A DNA stretch of 64,000 nucleotides, from positions 273,295 to 337,294 of the forward strand of contig NW_005434627.1 in the NCBI RefSeq assembly GCF_000315625.1, written 5' to 3'. Of this stretch, positions 5,265 to 52,611 are shown in pieces. The stretch's first letter is position 1, and each line of letters begins with the position of its first letter. Origin of the DNA: Guillardia theta CCMP2712 (taxonomy: Eukaryota > Protista > Cryptophyta). The notes beneath the pieces are model-generated. The model saw nothing but the letters and a program-made list of their open reading frames with translations, was not told the origin of the DNA and ran no database searches. The position numbers and the translations under genes were made by a program.

Positions 5265-7517
5265 CTATCGGAATCCAAGCAGGCGCTGTTTCTTCTCGGC
5301 AGGCATGATAGCTGGATGACAGGTGTGAGTCATCAGGGGATGGAGAGGGGTAGATGCCAAGGATCATCGAAGGGACAGGATGAGGTGCTGGGAGTGGTGC
5401 TGGGAGTGGGAGTAGTTACCTGATGCAGGCTGTTCTCTCAAGAGCTCCACGAAGCTATTCCACTCATCTTGACATTAAGAAAACATTCGGAAGGAGACAC
5501 GAGACACGAAAAACGTCAGTCATGACATCGGCAGAGGACAAGAGAATTACTGAGGTCCAAGGCCCCGTCTTGGTTCCTGTCCGCTTGTTGGAAGAGAGAT
5601 AGCAGTCTGCATGATGTCAGAGTCGGTCGGTCGCATCCAAACTCGTCACAATGTCTCATCGGGGCGGTAGCCCAGCTGCTGGATGGCTGCGCGTATCTGA
5701 AAGGAAGGAGAGGAGGAGAGTGAGCGGGTGGTGTACAGTGCTGCTTCAGCATTGTTGAGTGTCCTGTCACCTCTGGAAGCTGCAGGATCCCATCACGAGA
5801 AGTGTCAGCGAGGTAGAAGATCAATCTGCTGTTCTGCTGGATCCTCTCTCGCGTGCTGGACTGCGTCCGCTGTCAGACCTGGCGGGCACTGGCAACCAGC
5901 CAGCACACCGCATCCGCCGGCCCGATGGGAAGGAACTTGGCTGAGGACGATCTCGCTTGAGCATACTGCCATCGGTTTGAGTGGAGGAGGAAGCAACTTT
6001 CGACTTGTCAGACCTTCAGCTGGCTGGTGCTTGCCAGGTGCGCGTCGATGAGCGTGTAGGCATCGTAGATGGCGTGCACCCCCGCCGGAACCTGTCAAGG
6101 AGCGTCCAGTCAGACGAACTTGTTCTTCTCACTATCACAGAAGGAAGTCCGGAAGGTCTGACCAGGAAGTTGTATCCTGACAGGATGTAGAGCACGCCGA
6201 ACCAGAGTCCCGTCAGGATCTGAACAGGTTGGAGCATCTCACCATCTCACACCGGCTGCCTCGAAGACGATACGTACCTGTAACGGGACAACAACCGAGT
6301 TGTCTTTCCAGCTCCCGCCGATGGACCAGTGGGCCAGCCCAAACACCAATGAGGATGCCAGCAATCCCAGCAGAACGTTCGGATCTCCAGCCTGTCGGAC
6401 ACAGGTACAAGCTCAACCACAAACGTTTCATCGCCAAGATTGCATACAAGACATGTGCAAACTGAGTACGCAGGACATATTCTACATAGAACATGTTCTA
6501 TCTTCTACCTAGACGATCATGTTCTGCAGGCATGTTCTATACACACGTAGGACAAGACATGCTCTCCACACCTCTCCCAGCCTCTTGGCCAGAATCGGCA
6601 GACCCAGGGCGCGGAAGGACAGTTCTTCGCATAACCCGGTAATTGCACCAAGTACCGACGAGACCCCTGGAGCAAGTTTAGAGGAGCGAACGCTATGTGA
6701 CACGAGTCAACCGAAGGCAAACGGGATGTTCTCCTTGGATCCGAACAACTTGAGCGCAAGTATGTTGGTAGAGAAGTTGATGTCGATGAAAGCCTTCGAC
6801 TCCGACGTAGAGATTTTGTTTCCCAGGAACAAGATCGGGAACGAACCGAGCACGATCAGGATCAGAGGGAGGATGCCGACTCCTGCGTTTCCTAGGGCTG
6901 TGATCGTATCCTCGTACTGAAGTGTCTGGATGGTAAACAGTGATGTCACCCCTAGCAGAGCCTGATTCCTGTCGCATGTTGCAATGAATCCCAACCCTCC
7001 ACCTCCCCCCTCCCCACAAACAAACACCTCAAGAGGCTCCAAGCGAGGAAAAGATTGCCCGACTCCATAACTTCGGCAGAGAAGTACGCTGCCCCCTTCT
7101 CGCTGTCCTCTGGCTGTTATGAGAAGAAGGTGAATGTGACCTTCATAGAGCCTCTCCTCCACAAACCTTCACGTTGCAACGCGCTCCTCCGACCAGCGAG
7201 CGACCACGGCGGATGCGTTTGAAACACGATGGCACCGGAGAGGAACGGGAGCAGCGATTGTTTGCTCTGATCCCTGGAAGATGCTTGCAAGGGGAATGGG
7301 AGAAAGCCGCAGGAGCGAGCAAGAATGCGAGATCCGCGATGTGGAACATTGGTGAGGAGGATGGGGACGAAGGGGATAGGAGAGAGAGAGAAGAGGCCTG
7401 GGAGGACCAGGAGCGTTGGAGGAGGGAGGAAGACAGAGCGGGAGATATGATCGTGCGGGGCGAGGATGAGGGTTTGGCTGGCGAGGCAGCTGCCCAGGAC
7501 GCAGCGGCCAGCACCAT
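5265..7517 (-). CDS. CPBP/Abi (type II CAAX protease-like) intramembrane metalloprotease with two C-terminal EF-hands; probable N-terminal targeting peptide
   Basis: Exons give GLCEELSFRALG (EExxxR), SSLVFGLAHW (FxxxH), VPAGVHAIYD (HxxxD), several TM segments, and EF loops DTSRDGILQLPE and DRNQDGALDLNE. Probable last exon AIMPAEKKQRLLGFR*. The N-terminus is Ser/Arg-rich. Confidence 0.82.
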
Positions 7518-48439: not shown

Positions 48440-50095
48440 ATGGCCGTTCTAGCTGAGCTTTCCCATAGACCATTCCGAAGAGAAGAGATCGAGCACGAAA
48501 CAAATGTCTGCGTAACATGATCACATCAAGTCAAGGTTCGCTCTATATATCACCCCTCTTCCTCTTCCTTCACTCAAGGTAGAAAGTAAGTAGTCGCCGT
48601 AAGAAACCTTTCGGCCCGTCACCAACAACGATCGAGCTAACGATGCTATTACCTGACACTCCTCGAGGTAGACTGCTCCTCCTGCCTTGTTCCCAAAAGA
48701 GAGAAAGATTTGACAATGCTGCAACGAACACTGTTCTGCAGCAACGTCAAGGATCAATCACGTTTAGATGGTTGAAATCCGAGCAGTGTTAGCAAATATG
48801 ATGATGTTAGCAATCACGACGGCAATGCATATCAGAGAAGCACATGACGGATTAGATGAGAAAAGGAGAGAAGAAGAAACGATAAGGAGGACGAGGGGGG
48901 TCATGAGCAGATAGGAAAGACAAATCAATGCATCATGACGATTTTTTCTCACCGAGCACAGCAACTGCATTCCCGCCGACATGAACACCAAATTGAGCTC
49001 TGTCTTGCCAAGATGACGAGAATCTTCATCCCCATCTCACTCTCTGAAGCAACAACCTCACACTCACCTTGACTCCACCGGCTCCTTGCATTTCCCCCCG
49101 AAAGAGCAGTTCTTCGCCATCACGTTCGCCTGGATGGCAGGTGAGAGAAAGACTCGACTCTCCACATCTTAAGTTTGACATCATGACACAAGACATTCAC
49201 TTTCTCTCTTGCCCTCTCACTCCCATCCCAACCCTCACTGTCCGCCTGCATGGCACAACCTGATTTTCGCATTGCAGGGCGCTGGCATGTCCTCCCATGG
49301 TGCATGAGACGTCGCAACCATCGAGCCTCCACCTGTCGTGTCCTTCAGTCCCTCGTGGCGCTTCTAGTCCGGCATGTTGAAACCTGCCCGATAGGATGGA
49401 CAGCCCCGACCCCCAAGAACTCCTGATGGCAACGTTTGAGATGTGCCCCAAGGGTCCCTGAGCTGCTCGTCTCTGCCTCCCTCCTCTCAGTATCAATCCG
49501 AAGTGAAACACGACCGATTGCTCTCCCTACAAGAACGTCACGTACATTAACTTCACCTCACTATTCCCCGACCGCAATGTTCACCCCCTCTGGAACGACC
49601 ACCGACTGCGTCTTGTTTCGTGCTGTCAGCGGCATCAGGACACGAGGGACAATACGCATCAAGAACAACATCGCGTGAAGTGATCTCCTCCTCGCACACG
49701 AATTGTTTGCCCGCAGAAAGCGACTTCAAGCGCGTCTTCGAGGTAATGGTGCTCCTCCGGGACCAACACGTCCGTCTCGATCACCTTCTGCTCACCGTGT
49801 GACAAGACATGCCCTACGATACCAGCTGTCACCTGCATGATCGTCGGGAAGAGGTCCTCGAGCTCATGAAGAGAGGAGGATGCGCCTAGTCGGGGGTGAC
49901 CTGCCTCACTCTCAGCCCATTCAAGCAGCCGTGACGGGACGAAACTGCAAGGGCTGGTGGGCAAGCTGCTCTCAAGCACCGGCAAGCCCCATCCTTCCTC
50001 CTCCTTCCTCACATCTTTCTACCTGCCATGGCCAGAGCCATCGCGCTTGTTCGCCAGCTCTCGGAGCATCGCCGCCATTCCGGCCGCTCCCGCAT
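48440..50095 (-). CDS. Hypothetical right-handed beta-helix (pectin-lyase-like) protein, multi-exon; ends approximate
   Basis: Exons VLVPEEHHYLEDALEVAFCGQTIRVRGGDH, GHISNVAIRSSWGSGLSILSG/RWRLDGCDVSC, ANVMAKNCSFGG, AQFGVHVGGNAVAVL/EQCSLQHC resemble parallel beta-helix coils. Confidence 0.5.
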
Positions 50096-50634
50096 CACGG
50101 CATTTGAGACAACAACAACACGGGTAGGGGTGTACACAAGTAGGGGTCCTTTGGCCTGTCATCCTCTATCAAAACTAGGGTGGAGGGTTATGTTTACAGG
50201 GGTAGGCTTTAATTGGTGAATCCCCTCAAATGCATGTAGCGACATGCGAGAGGAAGGGAAAGCGGAGGAGGGGGAGGAGGGCAGAGGAAAGAGCAGCAGG
50301 GGAGGGGAAGACAGGCAGAAGTTGACAGCACACGGAAAGACAGCAGGAGATGCTGAAGTGACTTGCAAGAGAAACATCTCTAGTGAGCTTGCAACTGCGT
50401 ATAGATGAAAGTTGGTTCCTGCCAGATACGACAGCAGCTAGTGAGAGGAAAGCGAAGCATACAAATGCGAGCTTGATCATTATCGTCTGACTGACATGAA
50501 GTACAGTTTGAACAACAACCACAACTGTCAACCAAGATCGCAATGTGTCATCGCGAAAATCAGACTAACGAGGGTCAGTGCTAGTAACCCAAAGTCGACT
50601 TGGCTGATCTGTTGGGTGCGCAGACGATCCATGC

Positions 50635-51528
50635 ATGGCCAACCCGAGGCCGCAGCCTCCTGCATCTTCAAGTGACTTCAAGTCTCTCCAATCCAAGAGC
50701 GAGGCAACAGAGCTCCTTCAAAGACTCACGTCCATCTTCCCGGAGTCGCAAGTTGTCGTTGAGACAAACATTCTCGCTGTGTTGACCCCTTGCAACGTGC
50801 AGGACTCTCAGTTTCACTGGGCTCATCCCGACGAGATATCAGTCGCACATCACAAGACTCTGGTGCATGAAGAGCACTTGACGAAAGTCTTGCAGGTGTC
50901 TGTTGTTGGATTGCCCGGAAAGGCCCTTACTGACGAAAGACTGGCAGGAGAAACATGGAGGGTTGGAAGTGAGAGTAGAGAAGAGCGTTTTTCTTGAGAG
51001 GTGACGCATTTATGTTCTATCACCTCGTGAAGGTACTTCAGAAACGTCTACGCACGCAAGATCTTTCTTGTTTCCCCCGACGGAACAACCGTAGCCCATG
51101 CCATCCTCCTGGCGTTCCTCGATCGGCTTCCTGCTGCTGTGGGTGAAGGGGTGCGGGAAGAGAAGGTGCCCTTCGGGAGGCTGCTGATGCAGGTGAGAGC
51201 AGACGTGCGTGCGATGCTCCAGCTGAGAAGTTGAGCAGCACGTCTCTGAGCGTTGTGTCCACCTCATGTCTTGCTGGCACGTGGAGCTGGGAAGGGACCT
51301 GGAACCCCACCTGTGCAGTCAGGTGAGGAAGAGATGGAGAGATGAAGGGGATGGATCCGATGAGAATGTTGCAATGTCAGGCTCATCGTCGCACAAGCGG
51401 TCGAGTCGTCACCATCGAGTGTGCGGGGAAGGTTGTGAAGTTGATGCTTGTTGCATTGCTATTGTTTGAGCTTTCTGCTTGTCGAACAGGTGGCTGCTGA
51501 AGTGCTCGAGATCTTACGTGTAGAATGA
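50635..51528 (+). CDS. Chorismate-lyase (UbiC/DUF98)-fold protein of bacterial type, multi-exon
   Basis: Spliced: HKTLVHEEHLTKVLQ/EKHGGLE..YARKIFLVSPDGTTVAHAILLAFLDRLPAAVGEGVREEKVPFGRLLMQ/HVSERCVH..TSGRVVTIECAGK/VAAEVLEILRVE*; matches the UbiC-like pattern (S/H)(L/M)T..L..R.I.L..P(L/F)G.L.....R...E. Confidence 0.7.
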
Positions 51529-51570
51529 AACACTCGTTGGACCTCTCCCTTGTTCATTCATGTCGTGTTT

Positions 51571-52611
51571 TTATCCTTCTCTCATTCGCTCCTCGACAAC
51601 GCGCAGCTGTTCTTGCAGTGTCTTCTCCTTCTCTTTCAACATGGCGAGTTCTTCCAGCTCTCGTCTAGCTGACTGCATCATTCTTGATCAATCTACCTCA
51701 CAGACTGCCGTTAGCGCAACCTGAGGTCTTGTCGTTTTGTTTGCGTCAACATCCCCCCGAGAAAAATTGCCCTCAGTCAAGCTCGACTGCCCTGAACCGC
51801 CAGGTAGCGAGTCAAAGTCTACAAGAGCTCGGGAGGTTGACATACCTTTCCAAAGGCGGAGTGATTCAACTCTGTTTGCTATGTCAATCTGACAAGAGCA
51901 AAGCTTCCGTCGAAACTCATCCGCTGCCTCCGCGAGTCGCTTTTCGGCAATCCGCTCCTTCAACAAATATTCTACAGCCTGACAATTTCCAAGTTCAGCA
52001 AAGCACTTGTAGCCATCTTGAAATTCATCATTGCAATCGTAGCATAACGGACACATTTGTGTGAAAGGTTAATCAATGGATCGCATACCAATGAATGTTG
52101 CAGGCCTTGGGACCCTTTCAAGCGTTCCACGTGAGCTGTCTTTCGCTCGATGGCGGTTCTGAGTCTTAGAGCCTCTTCTCTTGACTGTTTGAGCTGCCCG
52201 AGTATTCTCATATCTGGCTGCACCTGAAGCTTCACGTATTCCTCTTGTTTCTCCAGCAGACTCAATCGAGACCGCATATCCTCGAGACTCCCCTCGCTCT
52301 CTAGCAGCTTGCTCTGTCTCCATGGATCTCCCGTAGATGTTGATGTCTCAGCTCCCTCAGTTATCAGATCCTCAGTCCCTCCTCGATCTAGACGCGATCT
52401 TTGCTGAGAAATCGAAGCAAGGTTCCTGCCATAGAATAAGCTGGGACCAAGCTTTCAACTCCAACCTGGAAGCAGCGTGAAGAAGTTTCTCTTCTGCTTC
52501 TACCAACCTTGCAACTTCACTGCTGTCCCATAGCCCACTCGGCGATCCCCAATGCACTAAGGCAGCTCCACCCTGTTCCTTCTCGCCTTCTTCGCTTCCC
52601 TCCGCCGCCAT
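51571..52611 (-). CDS. Hypothetical coiled-coil protein, multi-exon
   Basis: Exons EVARLVEAEEKLLHAASR, MRSRLSLLEKQEEY..REEALRLRTAIERK, KERIAEKRLAEAADEFRRKL, RRELEELAMLKEKEKTLQEQLRVVEERMREG*. Confidence 0.6.

What the first reader, a model, noticed from the sequence alone, without database searches (positions are those of the whole stretch)
50635..51528. Intron-containing nuclear gene for a bacterial-type chorismate-lyase (UbiC)-fold protein
Seen: the ORF track misses most of this protein, but joining GT-AG exons gives about 190 aa with LVHEEHLTKVL..YARKIFL..EEKVPFGRLLM..GRVVTIECAGK-VAAEVLEIL. Knowledge: this is the motif layout of the chorismate lyase-like superfamily (UbiC, DUF98, red-plastid Ycf21). 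UbiC makes 4-hydroxybenzoate directly from chorismate, whereas well-studied eukaryotes derive it from Tyr/Phe. Inference: from memory the sequence resembles an uncharacterised Planctomycetes/Verrucomicrobia-type family more than Ycf21. It may be a domesticated horizontal transfer giving the alga a direct route to 4-HB for ubiquinone. No targeting peptide is apparent.
Basis: partly seen in the sequence, partly recalled or inferred. Interest (0 to 1): 0.8.

Follow-up and report, generated by a model that had tools for sequence, protein, structure and literature searches.

The report
Bacterial-type chorismate-lyase-fold gene in Guillardia
A small, expressed, intron-rich nuclear gene of the cryptophyte alga Guillardia theta encodes a protein with the chorismate-lyase (UbiC/DUF98) fold, of a kind otherwise found almost only in bacteria; it may let the alga make the ubiquinone ring precursor 4-hydroxybenzoate directly from chorismate, but no activity has been measured.

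Summary
Window 50543-51528 (+) is a real, spliced, expressed nuclear gene of Guillardia theta CCMP2712 (GenBank GUITHDRAFT_163897, "hypothetical protein").

- **Gene structure.** They also confirm one upstream intron. They add a further in-frame 51-nt intron (50752-50802) that the GenBank model retains. The product is 209 aa.
- **Fold.** Pfam, NCBIfam and PDB sequence searches of the single protein find nothing. A 114-sequence profile hits the DUF98 structure 2nwi (E 5e-5). The AlphaFold model matches 2nwi (Z 15.7) and E. coli UbiC (Z 11.9).
- **Binding site.** The four 4-hydroxybenzoate-binding positions of UbiC align with conserved motif positions, two of them invariant residues.
- **Relatives.** The closest are Baffinella (another cryptophyte), some uncultured relatives of which at least one has introns, and then a large bacterial family. 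That family is mostly Planctomycetota, with Verrucomicrobiota, Acidobacteriota and Pseudomonadota also represented. None of the relatives scanned reaches Pfam's chorismate-lyase or DUF98 model. No cyanobacterial or plastid Ycf21 sequence was compared directly.
- **Origin.** Bacterial gene transfer is well supported, but the donor is unresolved.
- **Function.** No targeting peptide is visible. Chorismate-lyase activity and a role in ubiquinone synthesis are inferences.

I rate it a new member of a known kind, of moderate interest.

The parts
50543..50573 (+). First coding exon (start ATG 50543; transcript contigs reach back to about 50492)
   Evidence: P0001 N-terminus MCHRENQTNE; transcript contigs extend 68-81 nt upstream of the first joint; translation check
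50574..50623 (+). Intron, 50 nt, GT..AG, phase 1
   Evidence: Joint in transcript contigs of X1, X2 and X4; boundaries checked
50624..50751 (+). Coding exon.
   Evidence: the helix aligns with the L..L..LF motif of the bacterial homologues
50752..50802 (+). In-frame 51-nt intron that the GenBank model retains (17 aa, VVVETNILAVLTPCNVQ)
   Evidence: Skipped in transcript contigs of three studies; absent from the homologues; pLDDT below 50 in the model
50803..50895 (+). Coding exon with the LVHEEHLTKVLQ motif (T97 invariant; aligns with UbiC DSMTKRF)
50896..50947 (+). Intron, 52 nt, GT..AG
   Evidence: joint
50948..51000 (+). Coding exon (EKHGGLEVRVEKSVFLE-)
51001..51041 (+). Intron, 41 nt, GT..AG, phase 2
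   Evidence: joint
51042..51192 (+). Coding exon with YARKIFL (invariant R124, aligns with UbiC R76) and VPFGRLLMQ (P162 and G164 invariant; F163 aligns with UbiC L114)
51193..51238 (+). Intron, 46 nt, GT..AG
   Evidence: Joint in contigs and in raw RNA reads
51239..51322 (+). Coding exon (HVSERCVHLMSCWHVELGRDLEPHLCSQ)
51323..51380 (+). Intron, 58 nt, GT..AG
   Evidence: Joint in X2 contig and raw RNA reads
51381..51431 (+). Coding exon (AHRRTSGRVVTIECAGK; R205 invariant)
51432..51489 (+). Intron, 58 nt, GT..AG
   Evidence: Joint in X2 contig and raw RNA reads
51490..51528 (+). Last coding exon (VAAEVLEILRVE, stop TGA; invariant E221 aligns with UbiC E155). RNA depth falls to zero by about 51600

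Best explanation
This is a genuine, expressed nuclear gene of Guillardia theta with 8 coding exons and 7 tiny GT-AG introns. It encodes a 209-aa soluble protein, probably cytosolic. Residues about 71-226 of the GenBank numbering adopt the chorismate-lyase-like fold shared by UbiC, DUF98/Rv2949c-like proteins and UTRA domains.

The protein belongs to a divergent subfamily that Pfam does not cover. That subfamily is widespread in Planctomycetota and also occurs in Verrucomicrobiota, Acidobacteriota and some Pseudomonadota. Among named eukaryotes it is seen only in cryptophytes. An uncultured relative in the same clade carries spliceosomal-type introns, so it is eukaryotic too.

The most likely history is an old transfer of a bacterial gene into a eukaryote, followed by intron gain in the Guillardia lineage.

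The most likely function is chorismate pyruvate-lyase. An Arg (R124) and backbone amides would hold the substrate carboxylate and a Glu (E221) would sit at the other end of the ring, as in E. coli UbiC. Pyruvate would be eliminated to give 4-hydroxybenzoate, which COQ2 could then prenylate for ubiquinone.

Shown here: gene structure, expression, fold, family membership, conserved ligand-site positions. Inferred: the catalytic reaction, the cytosolic location, and use of the product for ubiquinone.
For: Gene and expression: splice joints in transcript contigs of three studies and in raw RNA reads; identity with GUITHDRAFT_163897 on a 593-kb scaffold; clean 630-nt CDS.

Fold: AF2 mean pLDDT 84, domain above 90. 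Foldseek gives 2nwi E 1.6e-7 and UbiC about 1e-4. VIA gives Z 15.7 (2nwi) and 11.9 (UbiC).

Sequence homology: the profile of 114 relatives hits 2nwi at E 5e-5. hhalign against E. coli UbiC gives probability 86-88% and E 4e-7 to 5e-6.

Ligand site: E. coli UbiC binds 4-HB through Arg76, Glu155 and the amides of Met34 and Leu114 (PMC7879144). These align with invariant R124, invariant E221, L96 (M in over 90% of relatives) and F163 inside the invariant P-x-G motif.

Family and origin: 239 relatives. Named ones are Baffinella (cryptophyte), Pirellulaceae, Planctomycetota, Gemmataceae and a Pseudomonadota MAG, and IMG names several 'chorismate-pyruvate lyase'. At least 557 loci were found in genomes, and the best 80 are all Planctomycetota. 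ESM Atlas neighbours are PVC and Acidobacteriota clusters at TM 0.92.

Tree: G. theta + Baffinella 98/80; eukaryote-type clade 99/98; bacterial sister group 95/96. The environmental relative L087 has GT..AG introns.

Metabolic context of the wider fold group: Atlas clusters fuse the DUF98 domain to beta-RFAP synthase or to DAHP synthase. In Planctomycetota the gene directly follows a polyprenyl synthetase gene in 54 of 64 informative loci.
Against: No activity has been measured for any member of this subfamily.

P0001 and 113 of 114 relatives miss the Pfam Chor_lyase and Rv2949c-like models even at E<=1.

UTRA ligand-binding domains score nearly as well structurally as UbiC (Z about 11), so the fold alone does not prove catalysis.

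The residue mapping rests on profile alignment, with a one-residue indel before the last strand, not on a superposition I could inspect.

From general knowledge, not tested here, Planctomycetes use menaquinone rather than ubiquinone. Their operon with a squalene-hopene-cyclase-like gene hints at a role other than ubiquinone supply.

The donor lineage is unresolved, and no outgroup root was possible.

Confidence: 0.55

Rival explanations
1. The protein has the UbiC fold and a carboxylate-binding pocket, but it is not a chorismate pyruvate-lyase. It either acts on a related substrate (isochorismate, aminodeoxychorismate, another benzoate or cyclohexadiene carboxylate) or only binds a small molecule, as UTRA domains do.
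For: No Pfam Chor_lyase or Rv2949c-like match. UTRA domains score Z about 11, the same as UbiC. In Planctomycetota the gene is embedded in an SHC-like / DUF116-polyprenyl synthetase / FAD-oxidoreductase cluster, with no UbiA-type prenyltransferase among the neighbours scanned.
Against: All four UbiC product-binding positions align with conserved motifs, including the invariant Arg and Glu. There is no DNA-binding domain. The best structural and profile match is the enzyme-type DUF98 protein, well above UTRA (Z 15.7 against 11). IMG's pipeline names several members chorismate-pyruvate lyase.
Confidence: 0.3
2. The gene is an endosymbiotic transfer of the cyanobacterial or red-plastid chorismate lyase (PlqC/Sll1797, Ycf21-type), not a transfer from another bacterium.
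For: Guillardia carries a red-algal-derived plastid. Cyanobacteria do have a UbiC homologue, Sll1797/PlqC (PMC12998194). No cyanobacterial or Ycf21 sequence could be put into my tree.
Against: All named relatives among the best hits are cryptophyte, Planctomycetota or Pseudomonadota. The nearest Atlas clusters are PVC and Acidobacteriota. None of 114 relatives matches the Pfam models for chorismate lyase or DUF98 at a significant level. There is no signal or transit peptide.
Confidence: 0.05
3. The locus is bacterial contamination or a dead remnant of a transfer.
For: The closest large family is bacterial.
Against: The gene has seven spliceosomal introns, all spliced in RNA from several studies. 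Its convergent downstream neighbour is also spliced, and the scaffold is 593 kb. The reading frame is intact with all family-invariant residues kept. An orthologue exists in the Baffinella genome.
Confidence: 0.01

Closest known systems
DUF98 / Rv2949c-like proteins (Pfam PF01947; structure 2nwi from Archaeoglobus fulgidus; Rv2949c is the mycobacterial chorismate pyruvate-lyase)
   Same: Best structural match (Z 15.7, rmsd 2.0 A, 22% identity). It is the only clearly significant PDB profile hit (E 5e-5). Same size, single domain, same motif order.
   Different: The Guillardia protein and its relatives do not reach the Pfam model: 1 of 114 at E 0.044. They carry an extra conserved N-terminal helix (L..L..LF) and have a different taxonomic range.
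E. coli UbiC, chorismate pyruvate-lyase (Pfam PF04345; PDB 1fw9, 1g1b, 1g81, 1jd3)
   Same: Same fold (Z 11.6-11.9 over about 142 residues). hhalign probability 86-88%. Arg76, Glu155, Met34 and Leu114 align with conserved family positions R124, E221, L96 and F163.
   Different: Only 15-17% identity and no Pfam match. This is a eukaryotic nuclear gene with introns, so it has no ubiA neighbour. UbiC's longer loop between the first two strands is absent.
Cyanobacterial PlqC (Sll1797) and red-plastid Ycf21
   Same: PlqC is a UbiC homologue that supplies 4-HB for a prenylquinone in a photosynthetic lineage (PMC12998194).
   Different: None appears among the named close relatives, and the family here is PVC/Pseudomonadota-type. 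No direct comparison was possible because I had no reference sequence.
UTRA effector-binding domains of GntR/HutC regulators (DasR, YvoA, PhnF)
   Same: Same fold (Z 9-11).
   Different: Identity is 7-12%. The Guillardia protein has no winged-helix DNA-binding domain. The UbiC-type Arg and Glu positions are conserved here instead.

Membership tests
Chorismate-lyase-like fold superfamily (UbiC / DUF98 / UTRA) | The alpha+beta fold with a long antiparallel sheet wrapped round a buried ligand pocket | tested here: met
   AF2 domain pLDDT above 90. Foldseek: 2nwi E 1.6e-7, UbiC about 1e-4. VIA Z 15.7, 11.9 and about 11.
Chorismate-lyase-like fold superfamily (UbiC / DUF98 / UTRA) | Detectable sequence homology to a member with a solved structure | tested here: met
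   Profile A1 against PDB: 2nwi E 5.3e-5. hhalign of A1 against E. coli UbiC: probability 86-88%, E 5e-6 to 4e-7. The single sequence alone finds nothing.
UbiC chorismate pyruvate-lyase (PF04345, EC 4.1.3.40) | Match to the Pfam Chor_lyase model at its gathering score | tested here: not met
   No Pfam family at E<=10 for P0001, and none of 114 relatives at E<=1. In the nearest Atlas clusters, 15-19% of members carry PF04345.
UbiC chorismate pyruvate-lyase (PF04345, EC 4.1.3.40) | Product/substrate-binding residues Arg76 and Glu155, and backbone amides of Met34 and Leu114 (PMC7879144) | tested here: met
   They align with R124 (invariant), E221 (invariant), L96 (M in at least 90% of relatives) and F163 within the invariant P162-x-G164 motif. 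This is by profile alignment, not by inspected superposition.
UbiC chorismate pyruvate-lyase (PF04345, EC 4.1.3.40) | Conversion of chorismate to 4-hydroxybenzoate plus pyruvate | not testable with these tools
   Needs an enzyme assay or complementation of E. coli delta-ubiC.
DUF98 / Rv2949c-like (PF01947) | Match to the Pfam model at its gathering score | tested here: not met
   P0001 has no hit. One of 114 relatives hits at E 0.044. In the nearest Atlas clusters, 11-16% of members carry it.
PVC-type 'chorismate lyase family protein' group (no Pfam family of its own) | Reciprocal sequence similarity and the shared motifs H-x-x-H-[ML]-T, Y-x-R, P-[LF]-G-R, G-R and E-[LV]-L-E-I | tested here: met
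   23 hits at E<=1e-10 and 239 at E<=1e-3. T97, R124, P162, G164, R205 and E221 are invariant across 114 sequences. Atlas TM 0.92.
GntR/HutC regulators with a UTRA domain | N-terminal winged-helix GntR DNA-binding domain | tested here: not met
   No Pfam GntR or UTRA hit. The N-terminal 70 residues are disordered apart from one helix.
Plastid-derived (cyanobacterial PlqC / Ycf21) chorismate lyase | Closest relatives cyanobacterial or plastid-encoded; plastid-targeting presequence | tested here: inconclusive
   Named close relatives are cryptophyte, Planctomycetota or Pseudomonadota. The N-terminus has no hydrophobic signal peptide (maximum 9-residue Kyte-Doolittle mean 1.0) and net charge -2. 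PlqC and Ycf21 sequences themselves were not available for the tree.

The most novel reading that the evidence does not exclude
The Pfam-invisible PVC-type family may not be a plain UbiC equivalent. It may make, or bind, a different aromatic head group linked to polyprenyl or hopanoid-type lipid metabolism. Planctomycetota keep it directly behind a DUF116-polyprenyl synthetase fusion and an SHC-like gene. Cryptophytes and some uncultured eukaryotes would then have imported this unknown chemistry rather than a simple 4-HB route.
Probability: 0.15. Interest if true: 0.75.

Novelty: new member of a known kind. Interest (0 to 1): 0.5.

Why it matters
Reviews state that mitochondria and eukaryotes lack UbiC homologues and take the ubiquinone ring from tyrosine, phenylalanine or pABA (PMC5714133 generally; PMC8231959 for yeast). 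My full-text searches found no paper linking chorismate lyase to Guillardia.

A nuclear, expressed UbiC-fold gene in cryptophytes would be a counter-example. It would give a short, directly testable route from chorismate to 4-HB in a eukaryote. It also adds a clear bacterial gene transfer to the cryptophyte record.

The work exposes a large bacterial subfamily that Pfam does not cover, with conserved operon partners in Planctomycetota. It also corrects the public gene model, which retains an intron. The practical test is simple: complement E. coli delta-ubiC and run an in-vitro assay.

Tried and rejected
- **Pfam on single exons:** no hits.
- **Single-protein searches with the full GenBank protein:** Pfam, NCBIfam and PDB sequence searches gave no hits, even at E<=10. 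Only the profile and the structure reveal the fold.
- **The search for related loci with the 114- and 15-sequence alignments:** It worked with five Pirellulales-type sequences, which biases those 80 loci toward Planctomycetota.
- **Word-indexed homologue searches:** found few further eukaryotes with P0001 or with the eukaryote-type alignment, and only Guillardia and Baffinella carry names.
- **Naming the source of the environmental eukaryote-type contig L081:** Pfam on six neighbouring ORFs gave nothing. GC is 51-68%, and the origin stays unknown.
- **Taxonomy of the nearest bacterial sister sequences:** only indirect, through shared synteny with a Pseudomonadota MAG.
- **Rooting the tree:** rejected. 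E. coli UbiC was the only outgroup sequence available and is too divergent at 15-17% identity. The tree is midpoint-drawn only.
- **Contamination and pseudogene readings:** rejected on the RNA evidence.
- **Folding or searching the corrected 209-aa protein:** not done, because it has no reference id and I did not type it. The fold was done on P0001, which contains the 17 intron-encoded residues outside the domain.

Full report
**What is in the sequence**

The window is nuclear DNA of the cryptophyte alga Guillardia theta CCMP2712. Exon 1 of the candidate is 100% identical to GenBank protein GUITHDRAFT_163897 (P0001), a 226-aa "hypothetical protein" on a 593-kb scaffold.

Joining GT-AG exons from ATG 50635 to TGA 51528 gives a clean 212-aa frame. 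The GenBank model is the same but adds one upstream exon starting at ATG 50543.

**RNA evidence**

I laid transcript contigs from three independent studies, plus raw RNA-seq reads, on window 49900-52300 (2,401 letters, within the operators' limit).

- The annotated upstream intron 50574-50623 is confirmed.
- One more intron appears, 50752-50802. It is 51 nt, in frame and GT..AG. Neither my first model nor the GenBank model removes it.

Three further observations agree that this extra stretch is an intron:

- Its 17 encoded residues (VVVETNILAVLTPCNVQ) are an insertion relative to the homologues that keep the conserved N-terminal helix.
- They have pLDDT below 50 in the structure model.
- Removing them leaves a 630-nt CDS of 209 codons.

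So the gene has 8 coding exons and 7 introns of 41-58 nt. RNA depth ends near 51600. The downstream neighbour is a convergent, spliced gene on the minus strand. Contamination and pseudogene readings are excluded.

**What the protein is**

Single-sequence searches are blank:

- Pfam and NCBIfam find nothing at E<=10.
- The PDB sequence search finds nothing.
- Single exons find nothing in Pfam.

An exhaustive phmmer search of 1.84 billion cluster representatives finds 239 relatives at E<=1e-3. A 114-sequence alignment (A1) has six invariant residues: T97, R124, P162, G164, R205 and E221 in P0001 numbering. Only one of the 114 touches a chorismate-lyase-type Pfam model (PF01947, E 0.044), so Pfam effectively does not cover this family.

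The profile and the structure do reveal the fold:

- The A1 profile hits the DUF98 crystal structure 2nwi at E 5.3e-5.
- hhalign of A1 against E. coli UbiC gives 86-88% probability, with E between 4e-7 and 5e-6.
- AlphaFold2 with A1 gives mean pLDDT 84, and above 90 over residues 71-226.
- Foldseek ranks 2nwi first (E 1.6e-7), then four E. coli chorismate lyase entries (about 1e-4), then UTRA domains of GntR/HutC regulators.
- VIA-align gives Z 15.7 for 2nwi (rmsd 2.0 A over 142 residues), Z 11.6-11.9 for UbiC, and Z about 9-11 for UTRA domains.
- The ESM Atlas's own model agrees, with TM 0.92 to bacterial "chorismate lyase family" clusters.

The chorismate-lyase fold claim is therefore confirmed.

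**Ligand site**

E. coli UbiC binds 4-hydroxybenzoate through Arg76, Glu155 and the backbone amides of Met34 and Leu114 (PMC7879144). In the global hhalign alignment these positions map as follows.

| UbiC position | P0001 position | Motif | Conservation in the family |
|---|---|---|---|
| Arg76 | R124 | YARKIFL | invariant |
| Glu155 | E221 | EVLEIL | invariant |
| Met34 (amide) | L96 | H-[ML]-T | Met in over 90% of relatives; followed by invariant T97 |
| Leu114 (amide) | F163 | P-x-G-R | lies between invariant P162 and G164 |

This is the main argument that the family is a UbiC-like enzyme and not merely a UTRA-like binding domain. It rests on alignment. I could not inspect a superposition.

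**Relatives and origin**

The closest relative is from Baffinella frigidus CCMP2293, another cryptophyte. It is present both in a transcriptome and in the genome. In the genome it is a single uninterrupted 750-nt ORF, so none of the Guillardia introns is shared with it.

Further members of the same clade come from unnamed environmental contigs. One of them (L087) is interrupted by GT..AG introns at positions different from Guillardia's, so it is eukaryotic too.

The rest of the family is bacterial:

- Named members are Pirellulaceae, Planctomycetota, Gemmataceae and one Pseudomonadota MAG. IMG labels several "chorismate-pyruvate lyase".
- A genome scan found at least 557 loci, and the best 80 are all Planctomycetota. 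The query alignment was Pirellulales-biased.
- The Atlas neighbours add Verrucomicrobiota and Acidobacteriota.

A careful maximum-likelihood tree (74 rows, LG+C20; the bootstrap had not fully settled) gives these supports:

- Guillardia + Baffinella: 98/80.
- The eukaryote-type clade: 99/98.
- A sister group of four uncultured bacterial proteins: 95/96.

Two of those four lie on large bacterial contigs. Their neighbourhood (a MOSC-domain gene, an M20/M28 peptidase gene, a TesB-like thioesterase gene) matches that of a Pseudomonadota MAG. Planctomycetota sequences surround this group without resolution. The tree is unrooted.

Bacterial origin by horizontal transfer is the reasonable reading: the bacterial range is broad and the eukaryotic range narrow. 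The donor phylum is open.

I could not place cyanobacterial PlqC or plastid Ycf21 sequences in the tree. Their exclusion rests on two indirect points. No named close relative is cyanobacterial. None of the 114 relatives matches a Pfam chorismate-lyase model.

**Function**

The N-terminus has no hydrophobic stretch and a net charge of -2 over its first 50 residues. That argues against a signal peptide and a typical mitochondrial presequence. A cytosolic location is inferred.

The wider fold group is tied to chorismate and 4-HB metabolism. Some Atlas clusters fuse the DUF98 domain to beta-RFAP synthase or to DAHP synthase.

In Planctomycetota the gene sits in a conserved arrangement:

- It directly follows a DUF116-polyprenyl synthetase fusion gene in 54 of the 64 loci with enough upstream DNA.
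- An SHC-like gene lies further upstream in 48 loci.
- A FAD oxidoreductase gene follows it in 22 loci.
- No UbiA-type prenyltransferase was among the neighbours scanned.

A polyprenyl synthase next to a ring-precursor enzyme fits prenylquinone synthesis. The SHC-like partner leaves room for another role. So does the general knowledge, not tested here, that Planctomycetes use menaquinone.

My estimates:

| Claim | Estimated probability |
|---|---|
| Chorismate-lyase fold | about 0.97 |
| Bacterial, non-plastid origin | about 0.85 |
| Chorismate pyruvate-lyase activity | about 0.55 |
| The 4-HB is used for ubiquinone | about 0.35-0.4 |

**Comparison with what is known, and novelty**

Reviews state that eukaryotes and mitochondria lack UbiC homologues and obtain the ring from aromatic amino acids or pABA (PMC5714133, PMC8231959). 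A search for "chorismate lyase" together with Guillardia found no paper, and broader searches on UbiC in algae and protists turned up none that I read describing a eukaryotic UbiC.

The fold and the likely chemistry are known, so this is a new member of a known kind. It belongs to a subfamily Pfam does not cover and sits in an unusual host. Interest is moderate. The gene would be a clear exception to the textbook eukaryotic route and is easy to test, but its function is unproven, and bacterial gene transfers into algae are common.

**Limits**

The fold was computed on the GenBank protein, which still contains the 17 intron-encoded residues. They lie outside the domain.

Noticed in passing
window 50752-50802: The public gene model GUITHDRAFT_163897 retains a 51-nt in-frame intron, adding 17 spurious residues. 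Transcripts from three studies splice it out.
   Followed up: yes
L074 2178-6555; L034 2119-6546; L016 1674-6570 (and 54 of 64 informative Planctomycetota loci): In Planctomycetota the UbiC-like gene lies directly behind a DUF116 + polyprenyl synthetase fusion gene. A squalene-hopene-cyclase-like gene lies upstream in 48 loci, and a FAD oxidoreductase gene follows in 22. This is a conserved, uncharacterised operon linking an aromatic-ring enzyme fold to isoprenoid metabolism.
   Followed up: partly
L086 3001-3750 (Baffinella frigidus genome): The cryptophyte orthologue is a single 750-nt ORF without introns, whereas the Guillardia gene has seven. The introns were either gained in the Guillardia line or lost in Baffinella.
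   Followed up: partly
L087 517-1400: An environmental homologue, called as a truncated 152-aa ORF, continues after GT..AG introns placed differently from Guillardia's (first one right after PFGR). An unidentified intron-bearing eukaryote also carries the gene.
   Followed up: partly
window 50496-50573 and onward in the spliced mRNA: If transcription starts at or before about 50492, as one transcript contig suggests, the first AUG (50496) opens a 94-codon ORF in another frame that overlaps the main start codons. This is a possible upstream overlapping ORF.
   Followed up: no
window 51541-52300 (minus strand): A convergent neighbouring gene has three CT..AC (minus-strand GT..AG) introns of 48, 54 and 110 nt. 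Its transcript contigs start within tens of bases of the UbiC-like gene's 3' end, so the two genes lie tail to tail with almost no spacer.
   Followed up: no
L082, L083, L084 around 6001-6600: The bacterial proteins nearest the eukaryote clade share a conserved neighbourhood: a MOSC-domain gene convergent with them, DUF3081, an SDR, an M20/M28 peptidase and a TesB-like thioesterase. The genomes are large, and one is labelled Pseudomonadota.
   Followed up: partly
P0002 (786-bp ENA contig): An environmental genomic fragment is about 92% identical to the Guillardia exon and reads on into the same intron. A close Guillardia relative is present in a public metagenome.
   Followed up: no
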